Source: Chrysemys picta bellii | Taxonomy: Eukaryota | Direction of reading: 5' to 3' | DNA: 64,000 nucleotides | NCBI RefSeq assembly: GCF_011386835.1 | Contig: NC_088797.1 | Span: 34,410,001 to 34,474,000 of the forward strand | Part shown: piece after piece, positions 1-9,780 of the stretch | Layout of the letters: every line of letters begins with the position of its first letter | How positions within the stretch are numbered: position 1 is the first letter of the stretch | The notes under the pieces: generated by a model | Told to the model about the DNA's origin: nothing | Database searches by the model: none | What the model saw: only the letters and a program-made list of their open reading frames with translations | Translations under genes and position numbers: made by a program

Positions 1-380
1 ATCCACAACAAGGAGGAAGTGGAATTGGGAGGGGTGCAAATACAAACCAGAATTAGAAGACAGGTAGAGACTTCAGTCTAAGGAAAGTTGGAAGAGACTG
101 GGGCTGTTTAGTTCAGATAAGGGACATCGGAGAGTTACACAAAATAGTAACTGGCATAGAGAAGGCAGACTGGGGACTCCATTTACCCCCAAAGTTGATG
201 CAGGAACAAAGAGACATTGAGTGAAATTAAAGAGGCAATACATTTAACACCAAAGAAAGGAAACAAGCACTGAATTAGTCTGTGGAACTCACTTCCACAA
301 GCTATGACTGGGGACAAGAGCCTAGCAGGATTCACAAAAGGGCTGGACACATCTGTGGATAATGGGAACATGTCCAGGTA
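1..380 (+). mobile_element. CR1-type LINE 3' fragment (degenerate)
   Basis: The purine-rich segment 'tgtggaactcacttccacaag...ggattcacaaaagggctggacacatctgtggataatgggaac' resembles the ORF2 end/3' UTR of reptile CR1 LINEs. Recognised from memory, not by database search. Confidence 0.6.
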
Positions 381-1307
381 TGTCAGACAGGAGAAGAGGC
401 TATAAGGGATGCAGACTCTTCAGCCTCAGGGCACAACCCAGCCCCTAAGGGAGCAGGGGGTTCCTCATGGGCAGAACATAGTCCTCCACACTGGAGTTTC
501 TTGTGCCTTCCCTTAAACCATCTGAGCCACTCCCAGAGGCAGGGCATAGGGCTGGAGAGGCACAGCTTGGGTCTGGGCTGGCAGCCCACAGGGCTGTTCC
601 ACAGACTGAAAGTTGTTGCATTTGGGGAGCTTTCCTGGCTTGCTTGCTGCAAAAAGAATTTTTTTCTCCAACTGGGGCACACACTATCCCAGGGCAGAGT
701 CCTGGGGATGCCAGCCTGCTCAAAGCCCTTGAGCCCTCCAGCTCCCCCACTTGTATCCTGTGCCCCCAGAACTCCCCTGGACCCTAACCCTGCAACCAAC
801 CTCCCCATGGTCACAGCAACCATTGCCCCTTCCCTTCCAGCATACCCCTTTGCCCCCTCACTCATGCCTCAGCCTACATATCACACCCCCAGTCCTGCAC
901 CATCACACCTCCAATTACACCATAGTTACACCAACCATAGCTTCCCCCCTTACTCCTACTCCAGCTCCCATGTTCCTCCCCGACACCCCACTCCTAACCC
1001 AGAGCCATCCCCATCCCCTTAGCTTTCCATATCCCAGTACCCCACACACCCTGCCTGTGCCCCCATCCCATACACTTAGCTCAAGTTCCCCTACTTGTAC
1101 CCCAGCTACCCATGCTCCTCTCTCTTGGCCCCCTGTACTCTTCCCTCCCCCATAATCAGCCCCTCCCGCTGAGTCACAGAGTTTAAGGCCAGATCATGTA
1201 ATCTCCTGTATATCACAGGCCACCAGCACCACCCCACCCCGCATACTAAACCCAACAATCCCTTCCCTGGCCCATGCATTCCCGCCGCCCCCCCCGCCAA
1301 CTCTCAC

Positions 1308-1496
1308 CTGTCGCTGTCCCCCTGGGACAGCCCCCGCCGGGTCCCCGATGCCCAGGGCGCTCTCCACGGTTCCCTTCTGCATTTCTCTCAGCAGTCCCAG
1401 CTCCAGGATCCCGGCCAGGCTGGCCTGAAGCCGCTCCCCGATCCGCACTCGGTCGCTCCCGGACCAGAGGGAGGGCGGCACAGCTCTGCGGGCCAT
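1308..1496 (-). CDS. DACT4: First coding exon of a DACT/Dapper-family gene, probably DACT4 (partial; further exons lie left of the window)
   Basis: The ATG at 1496 (minus) encodes MARRAVPPSLWSGSDRVRIGERLQASLAGILELGLLREMQKGTVESALGIGDPAGAVPGGQRQ (63 codons). It ends at a CAG|GTGAGA donor (GT at 1307-1306), phase 0. The core RIGERLQASLAGILELGLLREMQKGTVESAL matches the DACT N-terminal motif (human DACT1 [31 protein letters not shown]). The exon is CpG-rich. Family assignment is strong; DACT4 identity is inferred from synteny. Confidence 0.75.
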
Positions 1497-1977
1497 GAGG
1501 ACCGCCGGGGCAAGCGACACCGATCAGCGGGGTGGGGGTGGGGGCTTGCACCGGGGAAGGGACTGGGGGCGCAGCTCCTGGGGAGGTACATACACCGGGA
1601 ATAGGAAAAAAATAGAACTGGGGGCAGTGTATGCACCAGGGGCAGGATCGACTAGGCGAGGAAGGAGGTGCAGCAACCAGGACTCACCGGGTACAGCAGC
1701 TGCAGAGGGAAGTGTGCACCGCAAGCAGGAGCAGGATGCCGGGAGGGGGGTAAATTGCATGCACGGGGCAGGATGGGTGGGAGAGTAAATTACATCCACC
1801 AGCAGCAGGGGTGCTGGTAAGTCGCATGCACCGGGAGTAGGCTGGGGGATGATAAGTTGGATGCACCATGGGGGAGCTGGACGCACAGAGGCAACCCCCA
1901 GAAGCCGCCACCGGCTCCTCTTGCCAGGGACTTTCAGCACACACAGCAGCTCAAACAAAGGGGCTGGTTTTGAAAGA

Positions 1978-2019
1978 GTCACGTGGGGGCGGGGCCAAAG
2001 GCCCCGGGCTCCTGATTGG
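1978..2019. promoter_or_regulatory. Promoter module (E-box/CLEAR-like, GC box, CCAAT) between the divergent DACT-like and LC3C-like genes
   Basis: GTCACGTGGG at 1978-1987, an overlapping GGGGCGGGGC at about 1986-1995, and ATTGG (CCAAT on minus) at about 2015-2019, in a CpG-containing segment. Confidence 0.5.
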
Positions 2020-2644
2020 GTCCGACCCGGGCAAAACATTTCGTAGAACGAAGTGAGGATCAAAGGGGAGTAGACGGTAAATCCTGTATCCCCTCCCCCC
2101 CCCCCGTGCACCAGGGGGCCAAAAACCCATTAGACCCTCCCTCAAATGCACTATGGGGCAAATACCCGCAAACACACCCCGAGGGGTAAAATAACCCCAC
2201 TGCACCCCCCAGAATACAGCATAGGGGGCACAGGCCCCCATTACCCCATGGGAGGGTGAAATGCCATCCAAATCCTGCGAGGGGCCAATGTCCCCAAATC
2301 CTTCCCCCAGTGAGGGGCAGATTCTCCCCCAAATATAGCCCCAGCTCCCTTGGGGACAGGTCACTTCCCCATGCCCCGGACCAGCGACACCTCCCATAGC
2401 AGCCCCGGGCCCGACCCCACCTTGGCCGGCGGGGGGAGTGGGCCTTGGGAGTGACTGTGAGTCCGTGCCTGGGCTTGTTCGTCCATTCTCTCTCCCCCTC
2501 TTCCACCCCGGGGCCCAGCCATGTGGGCTCCTGCTTGCGGCTCTTTACGGAGCCAGGCAAAGGGATTCAATAACCATGCGGCCGAATTCCCCTCTAGCCG
2601 CTGGACGTGCATGGGGTGTCGGAGGTGGGGGCACCGCAGGGGGC

Positions 2645-2930
2645 AGGGGCAACTAATACACCTCCCTCTTTATCGCACATCCATGGGTGGCGGGGACAAT
2701 TAACAGATCCCCCTCTATCCCCATCATAGGGGGCAATTAACTGACCCCTCTACCATAGAGAGCAGGGGTAATTAACAGACTCCTCTCTACCCCCCATCCA
2801 TGTGGGGCATGGGCAATTAACAAGACCCCTCGGCCCCTCTGTTCCCCCATCTTAGAGGACAGGGGCAATTAACAGATAACCGCTTCCATCCCCATCATGG
2901 GGGGGGGGTACAGTTAACAGACTCCCTCTT
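2645..2930. repeat. Degenerate minisatellite (35-52 bp units) with core GGGGCAATTAACAGA
   Basis: (C/T)AATTAAC at 2697, 2734, 2769, 2814 and 2866, with variants at about 2650 and 2911. Most copies are followed by a CCCCTCT..CCCCATC tract. Confidence 0.8.
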
Positions 2931-3139
2931 CTCTGAGCAGAAGCAAAATCAGCCCATAGAGAAGAAAAACCCTCCCCCCGCTTCAGTGCCCTGCTCCCCA
3001 CCAGGAGCCCCCAGTCCCGTCAGGGCCCTTGCGCTCCCCAGTAGCAGCAGGGACCTGGCCTTAGGGATTCCCCCGCGGGCGGGGCGAGTTGCAGGGGGAT
3101 CCTGCTGCAGCTGGAGCAGCGCTGCGGCGCAAGCGGCGC

Positions 3140-3147
3140 TATTTAAA
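3140..3147 (+). promoter_or_regulatory. TATA-like box of the LC3C-like gene
   Basis: TATTTAAA 50 nt upstream of the ATG at 3190, in GC-rich context. Confidence 0.55.
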
Positions 3148-3189
3148 GGGCTCCGGGGGGTAGGCGAGCCCCGCTCAGCACCCTGCAAG

Positions 3190-4681
3190 ATGCTGCCAGT
3201 TACCAGCAACCGGGAGCCCCGCGCTCCCTTCAAGCAGCGGAAATGCTTCGGTGAGAGAGGAGCCCCTGGGCGGGTCCCTGCAGGGAGAGACTGGTTAATT
3301 CGAGGGTAGGGCGTCCCCTGTGGGGAAGCCCCTGGGCGGACCTCGGGGTGCCCTGCCCTCTTCCCCTCTGTGGGCTCGGAGCGGAGAGCCCCCCCGCCCC
3401 AGGAGCTAAACAAGGGGGCTGGACTGGAGCTCCCCCTGCATCTGGGGTGCGGGGAGACCTGCTCCGGGCTGGCTGCCTGTCCCTGCCCCACCCCCGGCGG
3501 GGGGCCGGCCCGGCCCGGATGGTCCGTCTGAGTATCCAGATCTCAAAGGGTGCTGCCCGCGCGGGGTCTCTCACGATTTTCAGGGGTCTCTGCTGGGGGA
3601 AGCCTTGGCTCGGCCCCCGTGACTGTGACCCTCCTTCCCGGGTCCGCTTCTCATTCCAGCTACTAGGAAACGCGAAGTAGCCGCGGTCCGCTCCAAGTTC
3701 CCCAGCAAACTCCCGGTGAGTGGGCAGGGCGACCGCTTGGCGGGAGGAGGTAGGGCGTGGGGGGCGCTTAGCGTGTAGCCTGGGGCCAAGGACACCAGCC
3801 ACTGCGTGGGAAATAGTCCCTCACCTCTTCTCTTCCCCCCCCCCACTCCGCAGGTGCAGGGAAAGGGTTGGGGGGGGGTGCCCATCTCAGCAGCGTGGCC
3901 TCAGGGAGGGGTGCTGCCTCCCTCCCTTTCCCACGTGTCTGTTTTCCAGGTGATCCTGGAGCGGTACCCCAAGGAAAAGGTGCTGCCAGCATTGGATAGA
4001 ACCAAGTTCCTGGTCCCTCAGGAGCTGACCATGGGGCAGTTTGTGACCATTATCCGGTAAGAGAAGAGAGGAGGTGTGTGATTGGAGGTGGGGGTCTGGC
4101 TTGGTATTGCACCCTTGGTGTCTGTGCCCCAGGTGCTGCTTCTGTCTCTGACCTGAGACACCATAGGGGGGGTGCTGTGACCTGGGCAGTCATTAGCCCC
4201 CTTAGGATGCCCCTGGCTGTGTTTCAGGGGTGCCATACAGCTTTGGGAGAGGTGCTACCAAAGGCTAATGCAGAGACTGCAGCTCTCTGAACAGCCCTTT
4301 CTTGTTCCAGGATGCCCTGGGTAGGGGACCCCTGTTCTCCTTGGCTGCTGTTGTGGGTTAAGTGCAGGGGTGGCTGTGAGCAAGTACAGGCAATGCCCAG
4401 GTAGTGCAGTTCCCCCCTGGGCAAGGCAGGCAGTGGGTGCTCTCAGGGGAGACCAGTCAGTGCTTTCCCTTCTTACCTTCAGATGGGACTCAGCTCTCCT
4501 GCCTTCTTGCTTCTCCAGGAACAGGATGGCCCTCAGCTCTACCCAGTCGTTCTACTTGCTGGTGGATGGTAGCCGGAGCCTGGTCAGCATGTCACTCACC
4601 ATGACTGAGGTGTACACACTAAACCGAGATGAGGACGGGTTCCTCTACATGACCTACGCCTCCCAGGAGATGTTTGGCTAA
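3190..4681 (+). CDS. MAP1LC3C-like: MAP1LC3C-like ATG8-family protein, 4 exons, 128 aa
   Basis: Exons 3190-3250, 3660-3715, 3950-4056 and 4519-4681, all GT-AG and phase-consistent (387 nt). Protein: [128 protein letters not shown]. The motifs [16 protein letters not shown] and SLVSMS are LC3C-type. Confidence 0.93.
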
Positions 4682-6078
4682 GGCCACTGGTTGCCTCGGA
4701 CTCCTGGTCTTCTGAGAGGAGCCATTCTTGCCCATTCTAATGTTGCTGCTTGGTAAATGGTGTCATCCCACCCCCTCCGGTCAGAGTAGGAATGATATTC
4801 CTACCTGGCCAGTGGGGCATCTACCCTGGTGTGCTGAGATGCCAAGGAACCTGCCCATTTCCTTCCTTCCCCAGGTGGGTGCCTGGGTAGACTTGCTTCA
4901 AAGGGAAAGATCTGACTCCAGAGTGAGGGCCCCTTTAGCTCAGAGCAAGTGCTTTCACCCTGTGTCATGCGGTGCCCATGGGATGGTCCTTTCTGTGTTG
5001 TGGGGATAGTCACACCCACCAGTCTCTTGCACTGGTGCCAGTGTGATTCTCTCACCCCCCCCCCCGTGAGACCAATAGGACCCCATTGCTTAAGGGGTGG
5101 TGTTGTAGGACACTGCTCAGTGCTGGCTCCGAGTTCCTGCTGCACCACCTGGGGCTGCTAAAGCCCAGCCTGTTCCCTCTGACCTTGGGATAGAACTCTC
5201 ATGGTAGTAGCTTTTGGAATAAGAGGAAGTAAACTTATCTTCCAGCAACTTTCCTAGCCCCAATGCTGACCCACTGGAGACCCTTCACCTCCCTGAACAG
5301 GGGTGAACCTCCTCCTCGAGGGCAGCCCTAGCTGTGGGGTAGACTGGTTCTCTTGTAAGGGAGGTTGAGTGGTGCAGGAGGGAAGGTAATCCTGCACATG
5401 GAATAAGCGTGGTCTGTCCTTTAGACTGCACATGTGTTCTCTTTAGAAGCATACCCTGTAACCACTAGTTAACCGTTAAACATGTTTCTGTAAATGCTTG
5501 TCTGTGTGAAATGGGACTGGCAATCCAATCCAGCATGGCTAAGCCACTGCAGTTGCTGAGAGTAATGACTGCACTGAGAGCTCCCCTGCCAGGTGCAAGC
5601 AGCTCATGCCACCAGTCAGTAGAGAGGCCTGAGGGGAGTGCACTAGTTACAGCTGTATTTAGAGCACATGGTCCCTTGGGCCTGTTATCTTGGTGCAAAT
5701 AACCTGTCCTGGATGGGAGGTTCTGTGCTGTGGTAACCCTGTCCTGGACCCACAACTGCTTAGCAGGCCCCAGTCTGAGCATTGTTTAGCTGGTGTGGTG
5801 TACTTTCCTCTCCAGTGCTGCGTAAAAGCTCTTGGATGCCGTGCTGGAAGCCTGTCTTCATTTCAGACAGATTACAGGCTGCTTTCTGCTGGCGGCTGTC
5901 ACTGATTCGGCAGTGGGCAAAGGAAAGCTGGGTTAAAAAGGCCTGTGTTATCTAAGCACCCAAAGCTTCTAAAGGTGTAGAGCAGGAGGGGGCTGAGATA
6001 GCAGCTAGTGTCTTTCCTGCTCCCTACAACGTGTGCATATACCAGGACCTCTCCTTCCATTGCTGCTGGGAAGACTGA

Positions 6079-6084
6079 TTTATT
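6079..6084 (-). terminator. Candidate polyadenylation signal for ZBTB3
   Basis: TTTATT on plus (AATAAA on minus), about 2.3 kb downstream of the ZBTB3 stop. Confidence 0.35.
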
Positions 6085-8382
6085 GCAGGGAGGGGAAGCA
6101 TCTGTTCTCATGTTCTGGGAACATGCTCGAGGAGGCTGGAGCATCCACTAAATAGGCAGTTCCTGTTCTGTACCCTGCTCTGGAGTCCCAGTCTGTTGAT
6201 TGCAGAGACTCCTGCACCAGACAGATGTAAAGAGGGACTTGGAACTGTGTGTGAGAATTTTTCCTCTTCAGAGTTGAGGGGAGTAGAAAAATTTCTTCCT
6301 GATTCTCACTTTCCTACAAATTAATTCTCATCTGGGTGGGAGTTCTGCCCCTAGTACAAAGCACCTTGGAGGCCCCCTTTCCATGGCACAAGAGTGATCT
6401 TCTTGTGCTGCTTCTGGAGTCTGGCTAAGGCAGGTAGGTGCACAGCAGTTTGAAGCTGGAAATCCCATCAGAAGGGGGGGCTTTAAGGGTCTCCCCTCTG
6501 GAGTTGGCCAGAAGCCTGGGTTTGTCCCCCTCCGCTCACCTCATTCTTCTCATGCTATTCTTAGCAGGGTTGAGTAAACTATGGAATCTCTCCTCAACCA
6601 GCCCTTGTGAGTGGGGCTTGGTGCTGTTCATCTCTAAGGCCCTGCTCCAGACCAACAGTGGCTAAATGACCATATCACCCCACCAAGGGGGTTGCCTCAG
6701 GCCAACTGCCTGTGTAATAAGGTAGGAGCCACAAAGACTGAACTCCCTCCTCCACTGTAGGAGTGAATCATGCAGGTTGCGCTGCCGCAGCCTGTCCTGC
6801 AGATAAAGGGACTTCTTTGTCGGCCTGAGCCAGAGAGGCCAGAGCTGCAGTGGAGCTGACCCCTCTAATGACACCAAAACGTGCTGGAGAGAAGACCACA
6901 GCACAGACAGCAGAAGCACTTGGTGCTAGTTTTACTATTGAACTTTTGTCCTGGGCAGTGACCCCAACTCCCGGCTTTGTACAGAAATGAGTCCTAGAAG
7001 CACTTTCACTCTGGGCTTTATATTTAGAGGATCAAATGATGAGTCAGATAAAAGATGGCTGCTCTGGGCTGTTGGGTTTGGTAGGTGGAGAAGGGCTGAT
7101 ATGAGGACAGTTTAGCAGCACAGCAGCTTCTGGAGTCTGTCCCTCCTGCTGCATTCACTGCTGGGGCAGTGTGGGGGAACAAAGATGTATTGACTGGGAG
7201 GGGCAACTTGAGCTTAAAGAGCTAGGGCCATGGGGTGGTCTTGAGCAGTCAGGGGCCCAAATACTGCCATAACACTAAAAACAATAGGAATCAAACTCTT
7301 AGCCTGGAACCTTAGGAGGGTTTTCACAAGCAGGTTTCTTGGCTGTAGGCGTTGTCTACCAATCTGCCCTTGCGCCCAAAAGCTCAACAGTTAGCAGCAC
7401 AGACAAAACTGGTACAAACCATTCCATGCAAATAACCCACCTTTCACCTTTTTGTCCCTTCCTGGGTGGTTTGCAGAAGGGCTAGTTGGCCCTAACGTCT
7501 CATAGCTGCTGGGAACTTAGCCTCTGGGATGTTGGGCTACTCCCTGCTCATTCCTGGGGGGCTGGAAGGGCCACAACCATTGGTGGGAAACCATTTTTTT
7601 TTAAAACTCACTTTATATCCTCTTGAAAAGAGAACCATGATTTACTTAAAAATACAACCCTAAAAGCAGAGCCTCTGTCTAAGGGGGATTAAGATGAATG
7701 AGAGTAACCTTCAAGGAGAGTGTGTCTGTCTGGGCATAAGTATTTATGCCAAGTTAAAAATAACCAAGAGAAGGGGTAGCGCTGGGAGTGGATGGTGGGG
7801 GAAGTGAAGGTTGTGTGTCTGCTCAAACTCACTCTGAAGCAATCACTCTAAACCCCTCTCTGTGAAGAGCTCCTGCCCAGGGTGGTAATAACCCTGACAG
7901 TCAGATACTGTCCTGGGTCTGACCTCCCACCTGCTGTGACCCACTCTGAGCATAAATATATGTGGAAGTGTTTCCTGGTTAGAATTTAAATTATTCTGAT
8001 CAATGCAGCTATTTCCAAACTATTTACAAAGCTGGCAGCAGTCCAAGGGGGGAAAGGCCAGTGTAGTGTGCCCAGCACAGGTCTACCCTGTATAAGAAAT
8101 GACAGTGACTCCTTCCGGCAGGCAGGGAGGTGGTACATGTGGCTTGGGCAGGAAGACAACTGATCAAGGGCATGAACCAGAGCAGCTGCTGGTTTGGAGT
8201 GAGGCCCCTGTTTCTATGGTCGCTGTGGCTCCTGATTAGAGTTCAAAATTCCCTGCTAGCATCTGGGGGGGCCTCACCACACCTCCAACCCATTTCTACA
8301 GGAGAGAATCCAAAGGCTTCCCCTGTACTGCTGAGGAGCGTCCGGCTTGTCCTAGATCCCTGGGTGGGGTAGATGTGGTTCA

Positions 8383-9780
8383 CTACGAGGGGTTCTCCAC
8401 GTCCTGTTTACAGCGCTTGGCTGCCAGGTCTTCATTGTGGGCCTTGCGGATGTGCCTGTACAGGTCCCCAGACTGGGTGTAGCTCCGCATGCAGTAGCGG
8501 CACTCATAGGGGCGCTCGCGCGTGTGCACAGTGGCATGGCGCCGCAGTGTGTAGGAGCAGGAGAAGGTCTTGCCGCACGTCTTGCAGGTGGGGACGTCCT
8601 CAGTGAAGATACCGAAGTTGGGGTGTGCCTCGTACTCTGGCAGGTACATCTGCTCATGCAGCGGTGGTGTCACCATGTTGGAGTAGCCCTGTCCACCCGG
8701 CACTGGGATCATGTGGTAGGGGAGATGCTCCTGTGGAAGGAAGCCGCCCTCTGAGGACACCTCCTCTATGCCACCAGGCTCCTCAAAGCCATCGGGGTGG
8801 CGACTGCAGCCCCCAGCTGGCCCCACCTCCACTGTGGGCCTCTGGAAGATGCTCTCCATCCTCATTTCCATGCTCCGCCTCTCCAGCTGCTCCACTGTGT
8901 CCGGCTCCTCGTCAGAGATCACAATGGCTTCCACCTTCACTTTGATGGGACCCCTGTCCAGCTCCTTGGGGTAGAAGCCATCTAAGTTGCCCACCCGTGG
9001 CTCCACGGCTAAGCTCTCAGGGATGGTTTCCAGGCCGGATGGTGCCTCTGCCACATTGCCTGGGGGAAAGTAGCTGTGGGAGATGGTTTCGGTGGAGCTG
9101 CTGGGGCTGGACAGGGAAACGTCTGCAGTGACTGGGGGGAGAGGCCTACCCAAGACAGGGCCACGGGGGGAGTCGCCCTCCATGCCTGGCTGGGTAGTAT
9201 CTGCCATGTCTGCAGTTGGTGCTGGAGGCTGCTGGGGGCCTGCTTTCTCCAAGGGGTTATTCTTCCACTCCTCCTTCTTGTTCTTTCCTGCCTCACACAG
9301 ATGCAGAGGTGGTGGCAGGACCTCAGGGCTCTGCAGCTGGCACTTGGAGGTGCTGGGCAGGAACTCAGAGCTGGCTGGGGAGTCCTCCTCCTTCTTAGTG
9401 CTGTCAGCCTCTGCCAGTGCCCGTGCCTGCAGCTTCTTCTTGCAGACCTTGACAATGTCATTCATGTGCAGGTAGCTTGCAGCAGCCAGCACATCCTCCA
9501 CTGGAGTGTCATTGAAGGCCAGCATGCCCTGGTACATGAACTCCAGCAGCAGCCCGAAGGCTGGTGCTGTGACAATCTCATTGTTGATGCAGACCAGATC
9601 CCGCTTGTCCAGCCGCTCCTTGTAGAACATGTGGAAGAAGGTGCTGCAGGAGGCCAGCACGGCCCGGTGTGCTAGGAACTGGGTGTTGCCCACCATGATG
9701 GTGCAGTCGCAGAGGAAGCCCTGGTGTCGCTGCTCTCGCAGGCTCTGCAGCAAGTGCTTACTGTGGTCAGGGAACTCCAT
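8383..9780 (-). CDS. ZBTB3: Zinc finger and BTB domain-containing protein 3, single coding exon, 465 aa
   Basis: N-terminal BTB domain [26 protein letters not shown]...[14 protein letters not shown] closely matches human ZBTB3. Two C-terminal C2H2 fingers ([21 protein letters not shown]; [22 protein letters not shown]). A splice acceptor (cttcag|cATG) lies immediately upstream. Confidence 0.96.

What the first reader, a model, noticed from the sequence alone, without database searches (positions are those of the whole stretch)
4670..4681. LC3C-like protein terminates exactly at the lipidation glycine (no ATG4 priming needed)
The CDS ends ...ASQEMFG-TAA (GGC 4676-4678, TAA 4679-4681). Mammalian ATG8 proteins are made with C-terminal extensions that ATG4 must remove to expose this Gly, and human LC3C has a tail of about 21 aa (established). 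This protein would be synthesised already primed for ATG7/ATG3 conjugation, bypassing a regulatory step (inference). The same state may be shared with fish map1lc3c-like genes.
Basis: partly seen in the sequence, partly recalled or inferred. Interest (0 to 1): 0.7.

Follow-up and report, generated by a model that had tools for sequence, protein, structure and literature searches.

The report
Turtle LC3C paralogue ending at lipidation glycine
The painted turtle has an expressed, conserved sister gene of the autophagy protein LC3C whose protein ends exactly at the glycine that is joined to lipid, so it should need no trimming first; this state is old and also occurs in many other animals, so it is a modest finding.

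Summary
A four-exon ATG8-family gene (3190-4681, + strand) ends ...Met-Phe-Gly (GGC 4676-4678) followed by TAA (4679-4681).

- **Not an error or private allele.** Spliced transcript contigs from four studies run unbroken through the stop into the 3'UTR, and none splices on a tail.
- **Conserved.** Every full-length turtle and squamate orthologue model ends at the same Gly. The stop codon itself differs (TAA, TAG, TGA). dN/dS is 0.04-0.16.
- **A paralogue, not LC3C proper.** It forms a separate clade (support 99/99) with its own gene neighbourhood (Dapper / ATG8 / BTB-zinc-finger / PLD). The clade includes gar, sturgeon, bichir, coelacanth, lungfish, a caecilian and alligator. No bird or mammal member appeared among about 190 relatives. 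Tails in this clade are 0-4 residues, except in alligator, where the stop has become GGA.
- **Turtles also keep LC3C proper**, which has a conserved 17-residue tail.

The "no ATG4 priming needed" reading fits published work on engineered pre-primed LC3s and on natural tail-less ATG8s of plants and apicomplexans. It is untested here. Priming is thought to be constitutive, so "bypassing a regulatory step" is overstated. Tail-less LC3C-type proteins are common (53 of 190 retrieved, including frog LC3C). This is a new member of a known kind.

The parts
3190..3250 (+). Coding exon 1 (ATG 3190; 20 codons plus 1 base), carrying the conserved PFKQRK N-terminal motif
   Evidence: Translation. GT donor at 3251. 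The same exon is found by tblastn in Emydura and Lepidochelys at 80-90% identity and is used in the 128-aa RefSeq-type models of other turtles. No RNA contig joins it to exon 2.
3660..3715 (+). Coding exon 2
   Evidence: Translation. The joint 3714/3949 (cut +1), GT..AG, is seen in contigs of X1 and X3.
3950..4056 (+). Coding exon 3 (ATG8 domain, first half)
   Evidence: Translation. Pfam PF02991, E = 4.4e-09. The joint 4055/4518 (cut +1), GT..AG, is seen in all four runs.
4519..4681 (+). Last coding exon, ending Gly GGC 4676-4678 and stop TAA 4679-4681
   Evidence: Translation. Pfam PF02991, E = 3e-13, to profile end 104/104. Contigs of four runs cross the stop without change.
4676..4681 (+). 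The finding itself: the conjugation glycine codon followed directly by the stop codon
   Evidence: The same position holds a stop in Emydura (TAA), Lepidochelys (TAG), Rhineura and Pituophis (TGA), another turtle's cDNA contig (TAA) and Rhinatrema (TAA).
4682..6059 (+). 3' untranslated region (minimum extent; true end not determined)
   Evidence: Contigs run on from exon 4 to 5450 (X12), 5495 (X2), 5621 (X1) and 6059 (X3) with no joint.
2065..2076 (+). Possible 3' end of an alternative non-coding 5' exon spliced to exon 2 (weak evidence)
   Evidence: Eleven loose letters ahead of exon 2 in one X3 contig match exactly and only here. GT follows at 2077-2078, and there is no in-frame ATG upstream.
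8383..9780 (-). Neighbouring BTB + C2H2 zinc-finger gene (465 aa), a synteny marker for this paralogue
   Evidence: ORF. Pfam BTB, E = 6.9e-28, plus zinc fingers. The same neighbour is present in Emydura, Lepidochelys, Rhineura, Pituophis and alligator.

Best explanation
This is the painted-turtle copy of an old sister gene of MAP1LC3C, listed in databases as 'LC3 gamma-like' or 'LC3C-like'. Placental mammals, and apparently birds, do not have it. It is transcribed, spliced and under strong purifying selection. It encodes a normal ATG8-fold protein whose last residue is the conjugation glycine. Shown here: the stop directly follows the Gly, it is present in transcripts, and its position is kept across turtles, squamates and a caecilian while the stop codon itself turns over. 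Inferred from established ATG8 biochemistry: the protein leaves the ribosome already in 'form I'. ATG7 can adenylate it and ATG3, with ATG12-ATG5-ATG16L1, can transfer it to phosphatidylethanolamine without prior ATG4 cleavage. ATG4 is still expected to act on it for deconjugation from lipid and from proteins. Because it lacks a propeptide, it cannot use any tail-dependent selectivity of the kind reported for human LC3C. The tailed LC3C proper that turtles also carry could do so.
For: Sequence and domain. The closest solved structures are human LC3C (3VVW, 2NCN; E = 1e-47), aligned to the final FG with the FKQRK, TKFLVP, IIRxRM and FYLLV segments kept. Transcripts: GT..AG joints and unbroken reading through the stop in four studies, plus a spliced cDNA contig from another turtle ending GGT TAA. 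Conservation: all full-length turtle and squamate orthologue models end at Gly. Stops are TAA/TAG/TGA at one position, and dN/dS is 0.04-0.16 over 106 codons. Orthology and paralogy: the Dapper(-)/ATG8(+)/BTB-ZnF(-)/PLD(+) order is kept in four reptiles and alligator, and Dapper/ATG8 in gar. The clade has 99/99 support apart from LC3C proper (100/99). Mechanism by precedent: pre-primed LC3B-G120 is lipidated and rescues autophagy in ATG4-deficient cells (PMC6526816). Pre-primed LC3C-G126 conjugates in ATG4B-knockout cells (PMC6709618). LC3C C127Stop is autophagy-active but loses tail-dependent cargo selectivity (PMC8129795). Plant clade II ATG8s and Plasmodium/Toxoplasma ATG8 naturally end at Gly (PMC7615515, PMC4206529).
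Against: No lipidation or ATG4-independence assay exists for this protein, so the mechanism rests on analogy. The exon 1-exon 2 joint is not seen in any contig, and some contigs start in intron 1, so the dominant mRNA may not encode the full N-terminus. The run type 'RNA' is a guess by the tool, inferred here from the spliced joints and the small run sizes. The alligator orthologue has lost the stop (GGA), so the tail-less state is not indispensable. Absence from birds and mammals rests only on their not appearing among about 190 listed relatives.
Confidence: 0.8

Rival explanations
1. The gene is real and functional, but ending at the Gly has no regulatory meaning. ATG4 priming is fast and constitutive, so tail length in this family drifts between 0 and a few residues. 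The turtle state is simply one point of that drift, held by the ordinary selection against read-through that acts on any stop codon.
For: Tails in the paralogue's clade vary: 0 (sturgeon, caecilian, turtles, squamates), 1 (bichir, lungfish), 3 (gar), 4 (coelacanth), and stop lost in alligator. Of the LC3C-type proteins retrieved, 53 of 190 have tail 0 and 26 have tail 1, including hemichordates, starfish, a clam and frog LC3C proper. Priming is described as immediate after synthesis and not induced (PMC4206529).
Against: The stop position is held across the turtle-squamate split (dS above 1) while the stop codon itself changed. The sister gene LC3C keeps a conserved 17-residue tail in turtles, birds and squamates, and the human LC3C tail has a reported function (PMC8129795). 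So tail presence or absence is not obviously neutral in this subfamily.
Confidence: 0.4
2. The stop is an assembly or sequencing error or a private allele, or transcripts add a tail by splicing.
For: Two Ensembl-type models of other turtles (P0008 Terrapene, P0010 Pelusios) carry odd tails.
Against: Four independent runs reproduce the stop with no differing letter and no joint out of exon 4. More than 20 orthologue models in other species end at the same Gly. The Terrapene tail maps to about 4986-5009 and would need an intron without GT..AG ends.
Confidence: 0.02
3. The protein is not conjugated at all: either it is a decaying copy, or it is an ATG8-like adaptor that acts unlipidated.
For: LC3C-type genes are often weakly and tissue-specifically expressed (PMC13020874). 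The gene was lost in mammals and apparently birds, and it looks more diverged in alligator (long branch of 0.45). The 5' end of the mRNA is unsettled.
Against: dN/dS is 0.04-0.16. The C-terminal YASQEMFG is invariant in the turtle sequences and most squamate ones (two geckos read ETFG and EVFG), and the docking-site and ATG4/ATG7-recognition segments are intact relative to human LC3C. That pattern is what is expected if the Gly is used.
Confidence: 0.05

Closest known systems
Human/mammalian MAP1LC3C (LC3C proper)
   Same: About 70% identical over the ATG8 core. The best PDB matches are LC3C structures 3VVW and 2NCN. It has the same C-terminal YASQExFG and the same four-coding-exon layout as the turtle LC3C-like gene.
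   Different: It falls in a different clade (99/99) and a different neighbourhood: Dapper/BTB-ZnF/PLD here, against fumarase/CEP170 for Xenopus LC3C. It has no C-terminal peptide, against 16-27 residues in amniote LC3C. It has one extra residue in the LLVDGSRS loop.
Engineered pre-primed LC3s (LC3B-G120, LC3C-G126, LC3C C127Stop)
   Same: They end at the conjugation Gly. They are shown to be lipidated or conjugated without ATG4 priming (PMC6526816, PMC6709618), and LC3C C127Stop is shown to be autophagy-active (PMC8129795).
   Different: Those are laboratory truncations of tailed genes. This is a natural gene in which the state has been fixed since before the turtle-squamate split.
Natural tail-less ATG8s: Arabidopsis clade II (ATG8h/i), Plasmodium and Toxoplasma ATG8
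   Same: The primary translation product ends at the Gly, and ATG4 is retained in the organism, presumably for deconjugation (PMC7615515, PMC4206529).
   Different: They belong to unrelated lineages and subfamilies and arose independently. The apicomplexan protein serves the apicoplast rather than canonical autophagy.
Anuran LC3C proper (e.g. Xenopus tropicalis, 124 aa)
   Same: It is a vertebrate LC3C-type protein ending at Gly followed by a stop (TGA).
   Different: It is the orthologue of LC3C proper by synteny (fumarase/CEP170) and by tree, so the tail loss is independent of the one in the turtle paralogue.

Membership tests
ATG8/LC3 ubiquitin-like modifier family (Pfam PF02991) | Sequence match to the ATG8 domain over its whole length | tested here: met
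   Exon 3 matches at E = 4.4e-09 (profile 20-52) and exon 4 at E = 3e-13 (profile 55-104 of 104). The near-identical orthologue P0005 matches at E = 1.5e-36 (profile 2-104).
ATG8/LC3 ubiquitin-like modifier family (Pfam PF02991) | Conjugation glycine preceded by an aromatic residue at the C-terminal end of the fold | tested here: met
   The protein ends ...YASQEMFG, aligned to G126 of human LC3C in 3VVW.
ATG8/LC3 ubiquitin-like modifier family (Pfam PF02991) | Covalent attachment to phosphatidylethanolamine through ATG7/ATG3 | not testable with these tools
   This needs biochemistry or cell assays.
Naturally pre-primed (tail-less) ATG8s | Stop codon directly after the conjugation Gly in genome and transcripts | tested here: met
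   GGC TAA at 4676-4681. Contigs of four studies cross it unchanged and unspliced.
Naturally pre-primed (tail-less) ATG8s | The state is fixed in the lineage rather than a private allele | tested here: met
   All full-length turtle and squamate orthologue models and one caecilian orthologue end at Gly. The stop codon varies but its position is kept. Exception: alligator has GGA.
Naturally pre-primed (tail-less) ATG8s | Conjugation proceeds without ATG4 priming | not testable with these tools
   Known only by analogy with LC3B-G120 and LC3C-G126.
MAP1LC3C proper (orthologue of human LC3C) | Groups with LC3C of other vertebrates in a tree | tested here: not met
   It falls in a separate clade of 20 rows (99/99), apart from LC3C of mammals, birds, turtles, squamates, amphibians and ray-finned fishes.
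MAP1LC3C proper (orthologue of human LC3C) | Conserved neighbourhood of LC3C (fumarase/CEP170 side, as in Xenopus) | tested here: not met
   This locus is Dapper / ATG8 / BTB-ZnF / PLD. Xenopus LC3C lies between fumarase and CEP170. Turtle LC3C proper sits elsewhere, on a chromosome of about 209 Mb, with no neighbour within 10 kb.
MAP1LC3C proper (orthologue of human LC3C) | C-terminal propeptide after the Gly | tested here: not met
   The tail is 0 here, against 16-27 residues in amniote LC3C proper.

The most novel reading that the evidence does not exclude
Reptiles, and bony vertebrates ancestrally, carry two LC3C-type modifiers that differ by design. A tailed LC3C has a propeptide that gives tail-dependent cargo or complex selectivity to newly made protein only. 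A tail-less paralogue is conjugation-ready at birth and keeps LC3C-type lipidation going when ATG4 priming is limiting, for example when ATG4 is oxidatively inhibited during anoxia and reoxygenation in turtles. Mammals lost the second arm.
Probability: 0.12. Interest if true: 0.7.

Novelty: new member of a known kind. Interest (0 to 1): 0.4.

Why it matters
A 2023 review states that Atg8 orthologues in all species are made as pro-forms needing ATG4 cleavage (PMC7615515). The exceptions recognised in the papers read here are plants and apicomplexans. This work shows that vertebrates also have natural tail-less LC3-type proteins:

- an ancient LC3C paralogue in fishes, a caecilian, turtles and squamates;
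- independently, LC3C proper of frogs.

I found no paper in the searchable library that describes this paralogue or its ending. The 2026 survey of vertebrate ATG duplications does not treat LC3C duplicates.

Because the same animal carries a tailed LC3C with a conserved 17-residue peptide, turtles and lizards offer a natural contrast for testing what the LC3C propeptide and the ATG4 priming step are for. The biochemical principle itself is not new, and the gene is already predicted in databases.

Tried and rejected
- **Sequencing error, private allele or spliced-on tail.** Rejected by four independent runs and by the orthologues.
- **Ensembl-type tails of Terrapene and Pelusios as real isoforms.** Rejected for this genome. 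The Terrapene tail would need a non-GT..AG intron, and no such joint is seen.
- **The gene as LC3C proper that lost its tail.** Rejected by tree and synteny.
- **Teleost 'LC3C-like' proteins as orthologues sharing the state.** The teleost proteins retrieved group with LC3C proper. Their tails range from 1-3 residues (acanthomorphs) to 11-39 (eel, electric eel, a cyprinid). The Sparus copies lie next to a striatin gene.
- **Pseudogene.** Rejected by dN/dS.
- **Coelacanth synteny.** The look-up found no record. Caecilian and turtle LC3C-proper loci showed no informative neighbours within 10 kb.
- **Earlier scan notes.** A word search returned nothing on this topic.
  - The joined four-exon protein of the window was not assembled or searched. 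Exons were searched by reference, and the database orthologue P0005 stood in for the whole protein.
  - The assembly gap after the alligator Gly codon was left unread.
  - Structure prediction and the large representative search were not run, because sequence identity to solved LC3C structures already settles the fold.

Full report
**1. What is in the sequence.** The + strand around the finding reads ATG TTT GGC TAA at 4670-4681.

The reading frame belongs to a four-exon gene:

| Exon | Coordinates | Note |
|---|---|---|
| E1 | 3190-3250 | ATG at 3190 |
| E2 | 3660-3715 | |
| E3 | 3950-4056 | |
| E4 | 4519-4681 | ends with the stop |

All introns are GT..AG, and the gene has 128 codons. Exons 3 and 4 each match Pfam PF02991 (ATG8), and exon 4 runs to the last profile position. 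A scan note and a 100%-identical UniRef fragment named Chrysemys picta bellii (P0001) indicate that the genome is the painted turtle.

Exons were searched by reference. For whole-protein steps I used the database orthologue P0005 (Pangshura, 128 aa, a few residues different).

**2. Is the stop real, and do transcripts add a tail?** I laid contigs of four runs from four studies on 3000-8400.
- They show the joints 3714/3949 and 4055/4518 (both GT..AG, cut +1, which gives my exon borders). They therefore derive from spliced RNA, although the tool only guesses 'RNA'.
- Each contig that enters exon 4 continues through 4679-4681 with no differing letter, on to 5450, 5495, 5621 or 6059.
- No joint leaves exon 4.

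A 1346-base spliced contig from another turtle (L001) likewise ends GGT TAA and continues into a homologous 3'UTR.

Two Ensembl-type models in other turtles carry odd tails (P0008, P0010). The Terrapene tail maps to about 4986-5009 of this window and would need an intron without GT..AG ends, and nothing supports it.

One weakness remains. No contig joins exon 1 to exon 2. One contig reads unspliced across exon 1 into intron 1, and two start inside intron 1. One X3 contig carries 11 letters ahead of exon 2 that match only 2065-2075, which is followed by G|GT. The 5' end is thus less settled than the 3' end of the CDS. Exon 1 itself is conserved and carries the family's PFKQRK motif.

**3. Conservation.** A search with the last exon (by reference, through the ORF 4370-4678, region 50-103) and a second search with P0005 returned about 190 LC3C-type proteins.

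All full-length models that end at the Gly:
- Turtles: Carettochelys, Pangshura, Lepidochelys and the pleurodire Emydura.
- Squamates: Rhineura, Pituophis, Podarcis, Lerista, Pogona, Varanus, Sphaerodactylus, Euleptes, Hemicordylus, Gekko, Heteronotia and several snakes.

At the DNA level the codon after the Gly is:

| Species | Codon after Gly |
|---|---|
| Chrysemys | TAA |
| Second turtle (L001) | TAA |
| Emydura | TAA |
| Lepidochelys | TAG |
| Rhineura | TGA |
| Pituophis | TGA |
| Rhinatrema (caecilian) | TAA |

. The stop has turned over while its position has stayed fixed.

Nei-Gojobori counts, made exon by exon over 106 codons, give dN/dS of 0.04-0.16 for all pairs with measurable dS. 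The gene is therefore under purifying selection.

**4. Which gene is it?** In Emydura, Lepidochelys, Rhineura and Pituophis the gene sits in the same order as here: Dapper (-), ATG8 (+), BTB-zinc-finger (-), PLD (+). In the window, the BTB-ZnF ORF is at 8383-9780, and earlier scan notes report a DACT exon at 1308-1496 and a PLD3-type gene from about 11260. Alligator keeps ATG8/ZnF/PLD, and gar keeps Dapper/ATG8.

By contrast, Xenopus LC3C lies between fumarase and CEP170. From my own knowledge of the human 1q43 map, not tested here, that is the LC3C side.

A maximum-likelihood tree of 60 cores, with tails removed, places the turtle gene in a clade with 99/99 support. The clade holds lungfish, bichir, coelacanth, sturgeon, gar, caecilian, alligator and squamate proteins. 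It stands apart from LC3C proper of mammals, birds, turtles, squamates, amphibians and ray-finned fishes (100/99 in the smaller tree).

Turtles also have LC3C proper, 143 aa with a 17-residue tail (P0050, P0052, P0054). So the finding concerns an ancient paralogue, not LC3C itself. No bird or mammal member of this clade was among the listed hits. That is suggestive of loss but is not proof.

**5. Tail lengths in context.**

| Group | Tail after the Gly (residues) |
|---|---|
| Paralogue: sturgeon, caecilian, turtles, squamates | 0 |
| Paralogue: bichir, lungfish | 1 |
| Paralogue: gar | 3 |
| Paralogue: coelacanth | 4 |
| Paralogue: alligator | stop lost (codon is GGA) |
| LC3C proper: amniotes | 16-27 |
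| LC3C proper: most frogs | 0 |
| LC3C proper: acanthomorph teleosts | 1-3 |

- In alligator an assembly gap lies 23 bases after the GGA codon. I left it unread.
- The sauropsid LC3C tail is conserved (17 residues, ending ...EC.xKT).
- The Xenopus LC3C stop is TGA.
- Several invertebrate LC3C-type proteins also end at the Gly, including hemichordates, starfish and a clam.
- Overall, 53 of 190 retrieved proteins have no tail and 26 have one residue. This sample is biased towards relatives of the query.

Ending at the Gly is therefore recurrent in this subfamily and not unique to the turtle.

**6. How it most likely works.** The protein aligns to human LC3C structures (3VVW, 2NCN; E = 1e-47) up to the final FG. 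The segments that form the LIR-docking site and the ATG4/ATG7-recognition surface are kept: FKQRK, TKFLVP, IIRxRM and FYLLV. It has one extra residue in the LLVDGSRS loop.

Published precedent:
- LC3B-G120 is lipidated, reaches autophagosomes and rescues SQSTM1 turnover in ATG4-deficient cells (PMC6526816).
- Pre-primed LC3C-G126 forms conjugates in ATG4B-knockout cells, and ATG4 removes them (PMC6709618).
- LC3C C127Stop is still autophagy-active but loses the tail-dependent degradation of midbody rings (PMC8129795).
- Plant clade II ATG8s and Plasmodium/Toxoplasma ATG8 naturally end at Gly while ATG4 is retained for deconjugation (PMC7615515, PMC4206529).

From this I infer the following. 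The turtle protein is made conjugation-ready. It goes directly to ATG7 and ATG3. It still depends on ATG4 for recycling. It lacks any propeptide-based selectivity. None of this was tested on the protein itself.

The phrase 'bypassing a regulatory step' is too strong, because priming is described as immediate and constitutive.

**7. Novelty and verdict.** The gene is already predicted in public databases as 'LC3 gamma-like/LC3C-like', and the principle of tail-less ATG8s is known.
- I found no paper in the searchable library on this vertebrate paralogue, on its ending, or on the tail-less frog LC3C.
- A 2026 study of vertebrate ATG duplications does not cover LC3C duplicates.
- A 2023 review still states that all species make a pro-form.

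I rate this a new member of a known kind and of moderate interest. The useful addition is the natural tailed/tail-less LC3C pair within one animal.

Noticed in passing
window 2065-2078 (+): An X3 transcript contig carries 11 letters ahead of exon 2 that match exactly and only at 2065-2075, followed by G|GT. This may be an alternative non-coding 5' exon that skips coding exon 1. There is no in-frame ATG upstream.
   Followed up: partly
window 3055-3660 (+): No contig joins exon 1 to exon 2. One contig reads 3055-3483 unspliced, and others (including another turtle's cDNA contig, L001) begin inside intron 1. This suggests intron-1 retention or an internal start site.
   Followed up: partly
window 8383-9780 (-): An intact single-exon 465-aa BTB/POZ + C2H2 zinc-finger gene lies tail-to-tail with the LC3C-like gene. 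It occupies the same position in turtles, squamates and alligator. From memory, its N-terminus resembles ZBTB18/ZBTB42; this was not tested.
   Followed up: partly
L009 10556-10580 (Alligator sinensis): The alligator orthologue has GGA instead of a stop after the Gly codon, a long branch in the tree, and an assembly gap 23 bases downstream. Its tail length cannot be read, and the gap was left unfilled.
   Followed up: partly
L008 14086-14244 (Xenopus tropicalis); P0030, P0041, P0072, P0091, P0092, P0104, P0118: LC3C proper of most frogs also ends at the Gly (TGA in Xenopus). This is an independent loss of the propeptide in the true LC3C orthologue, which lies between fumarase and CEP170.
   Followed up: partly
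P0047, P0049, P0050, P0052, P0054, P0032, P0037, P0079, P0099 (LC3C proper): The C-terminal peptide of LC3C proper is 16-17 residues long and ends in a shared ...EC.xKT pattern in turtles, birds and squamates. This sits uneasily with the published statement that the LC3C peptide is conserved only among primates.
   Followed up: no
L004 and L005 (Sparus aurata, same chromosome, about 33 kb apart): Two places encode the identical 158-aa LC3C-type protein, one of them next to a striatin-family gene. This is either a recent tandem duplicate or an assembly duplication.
   Followed up: no
window 5054 and 7593: Single-base insertions relative to the window appear in some transcript contigs: a C after 5054 in two runs and a T after 7593 in one. 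Both lie in homopolymer-like 3'UTR sequence and are probably polymorphisms.
   Followed up: no
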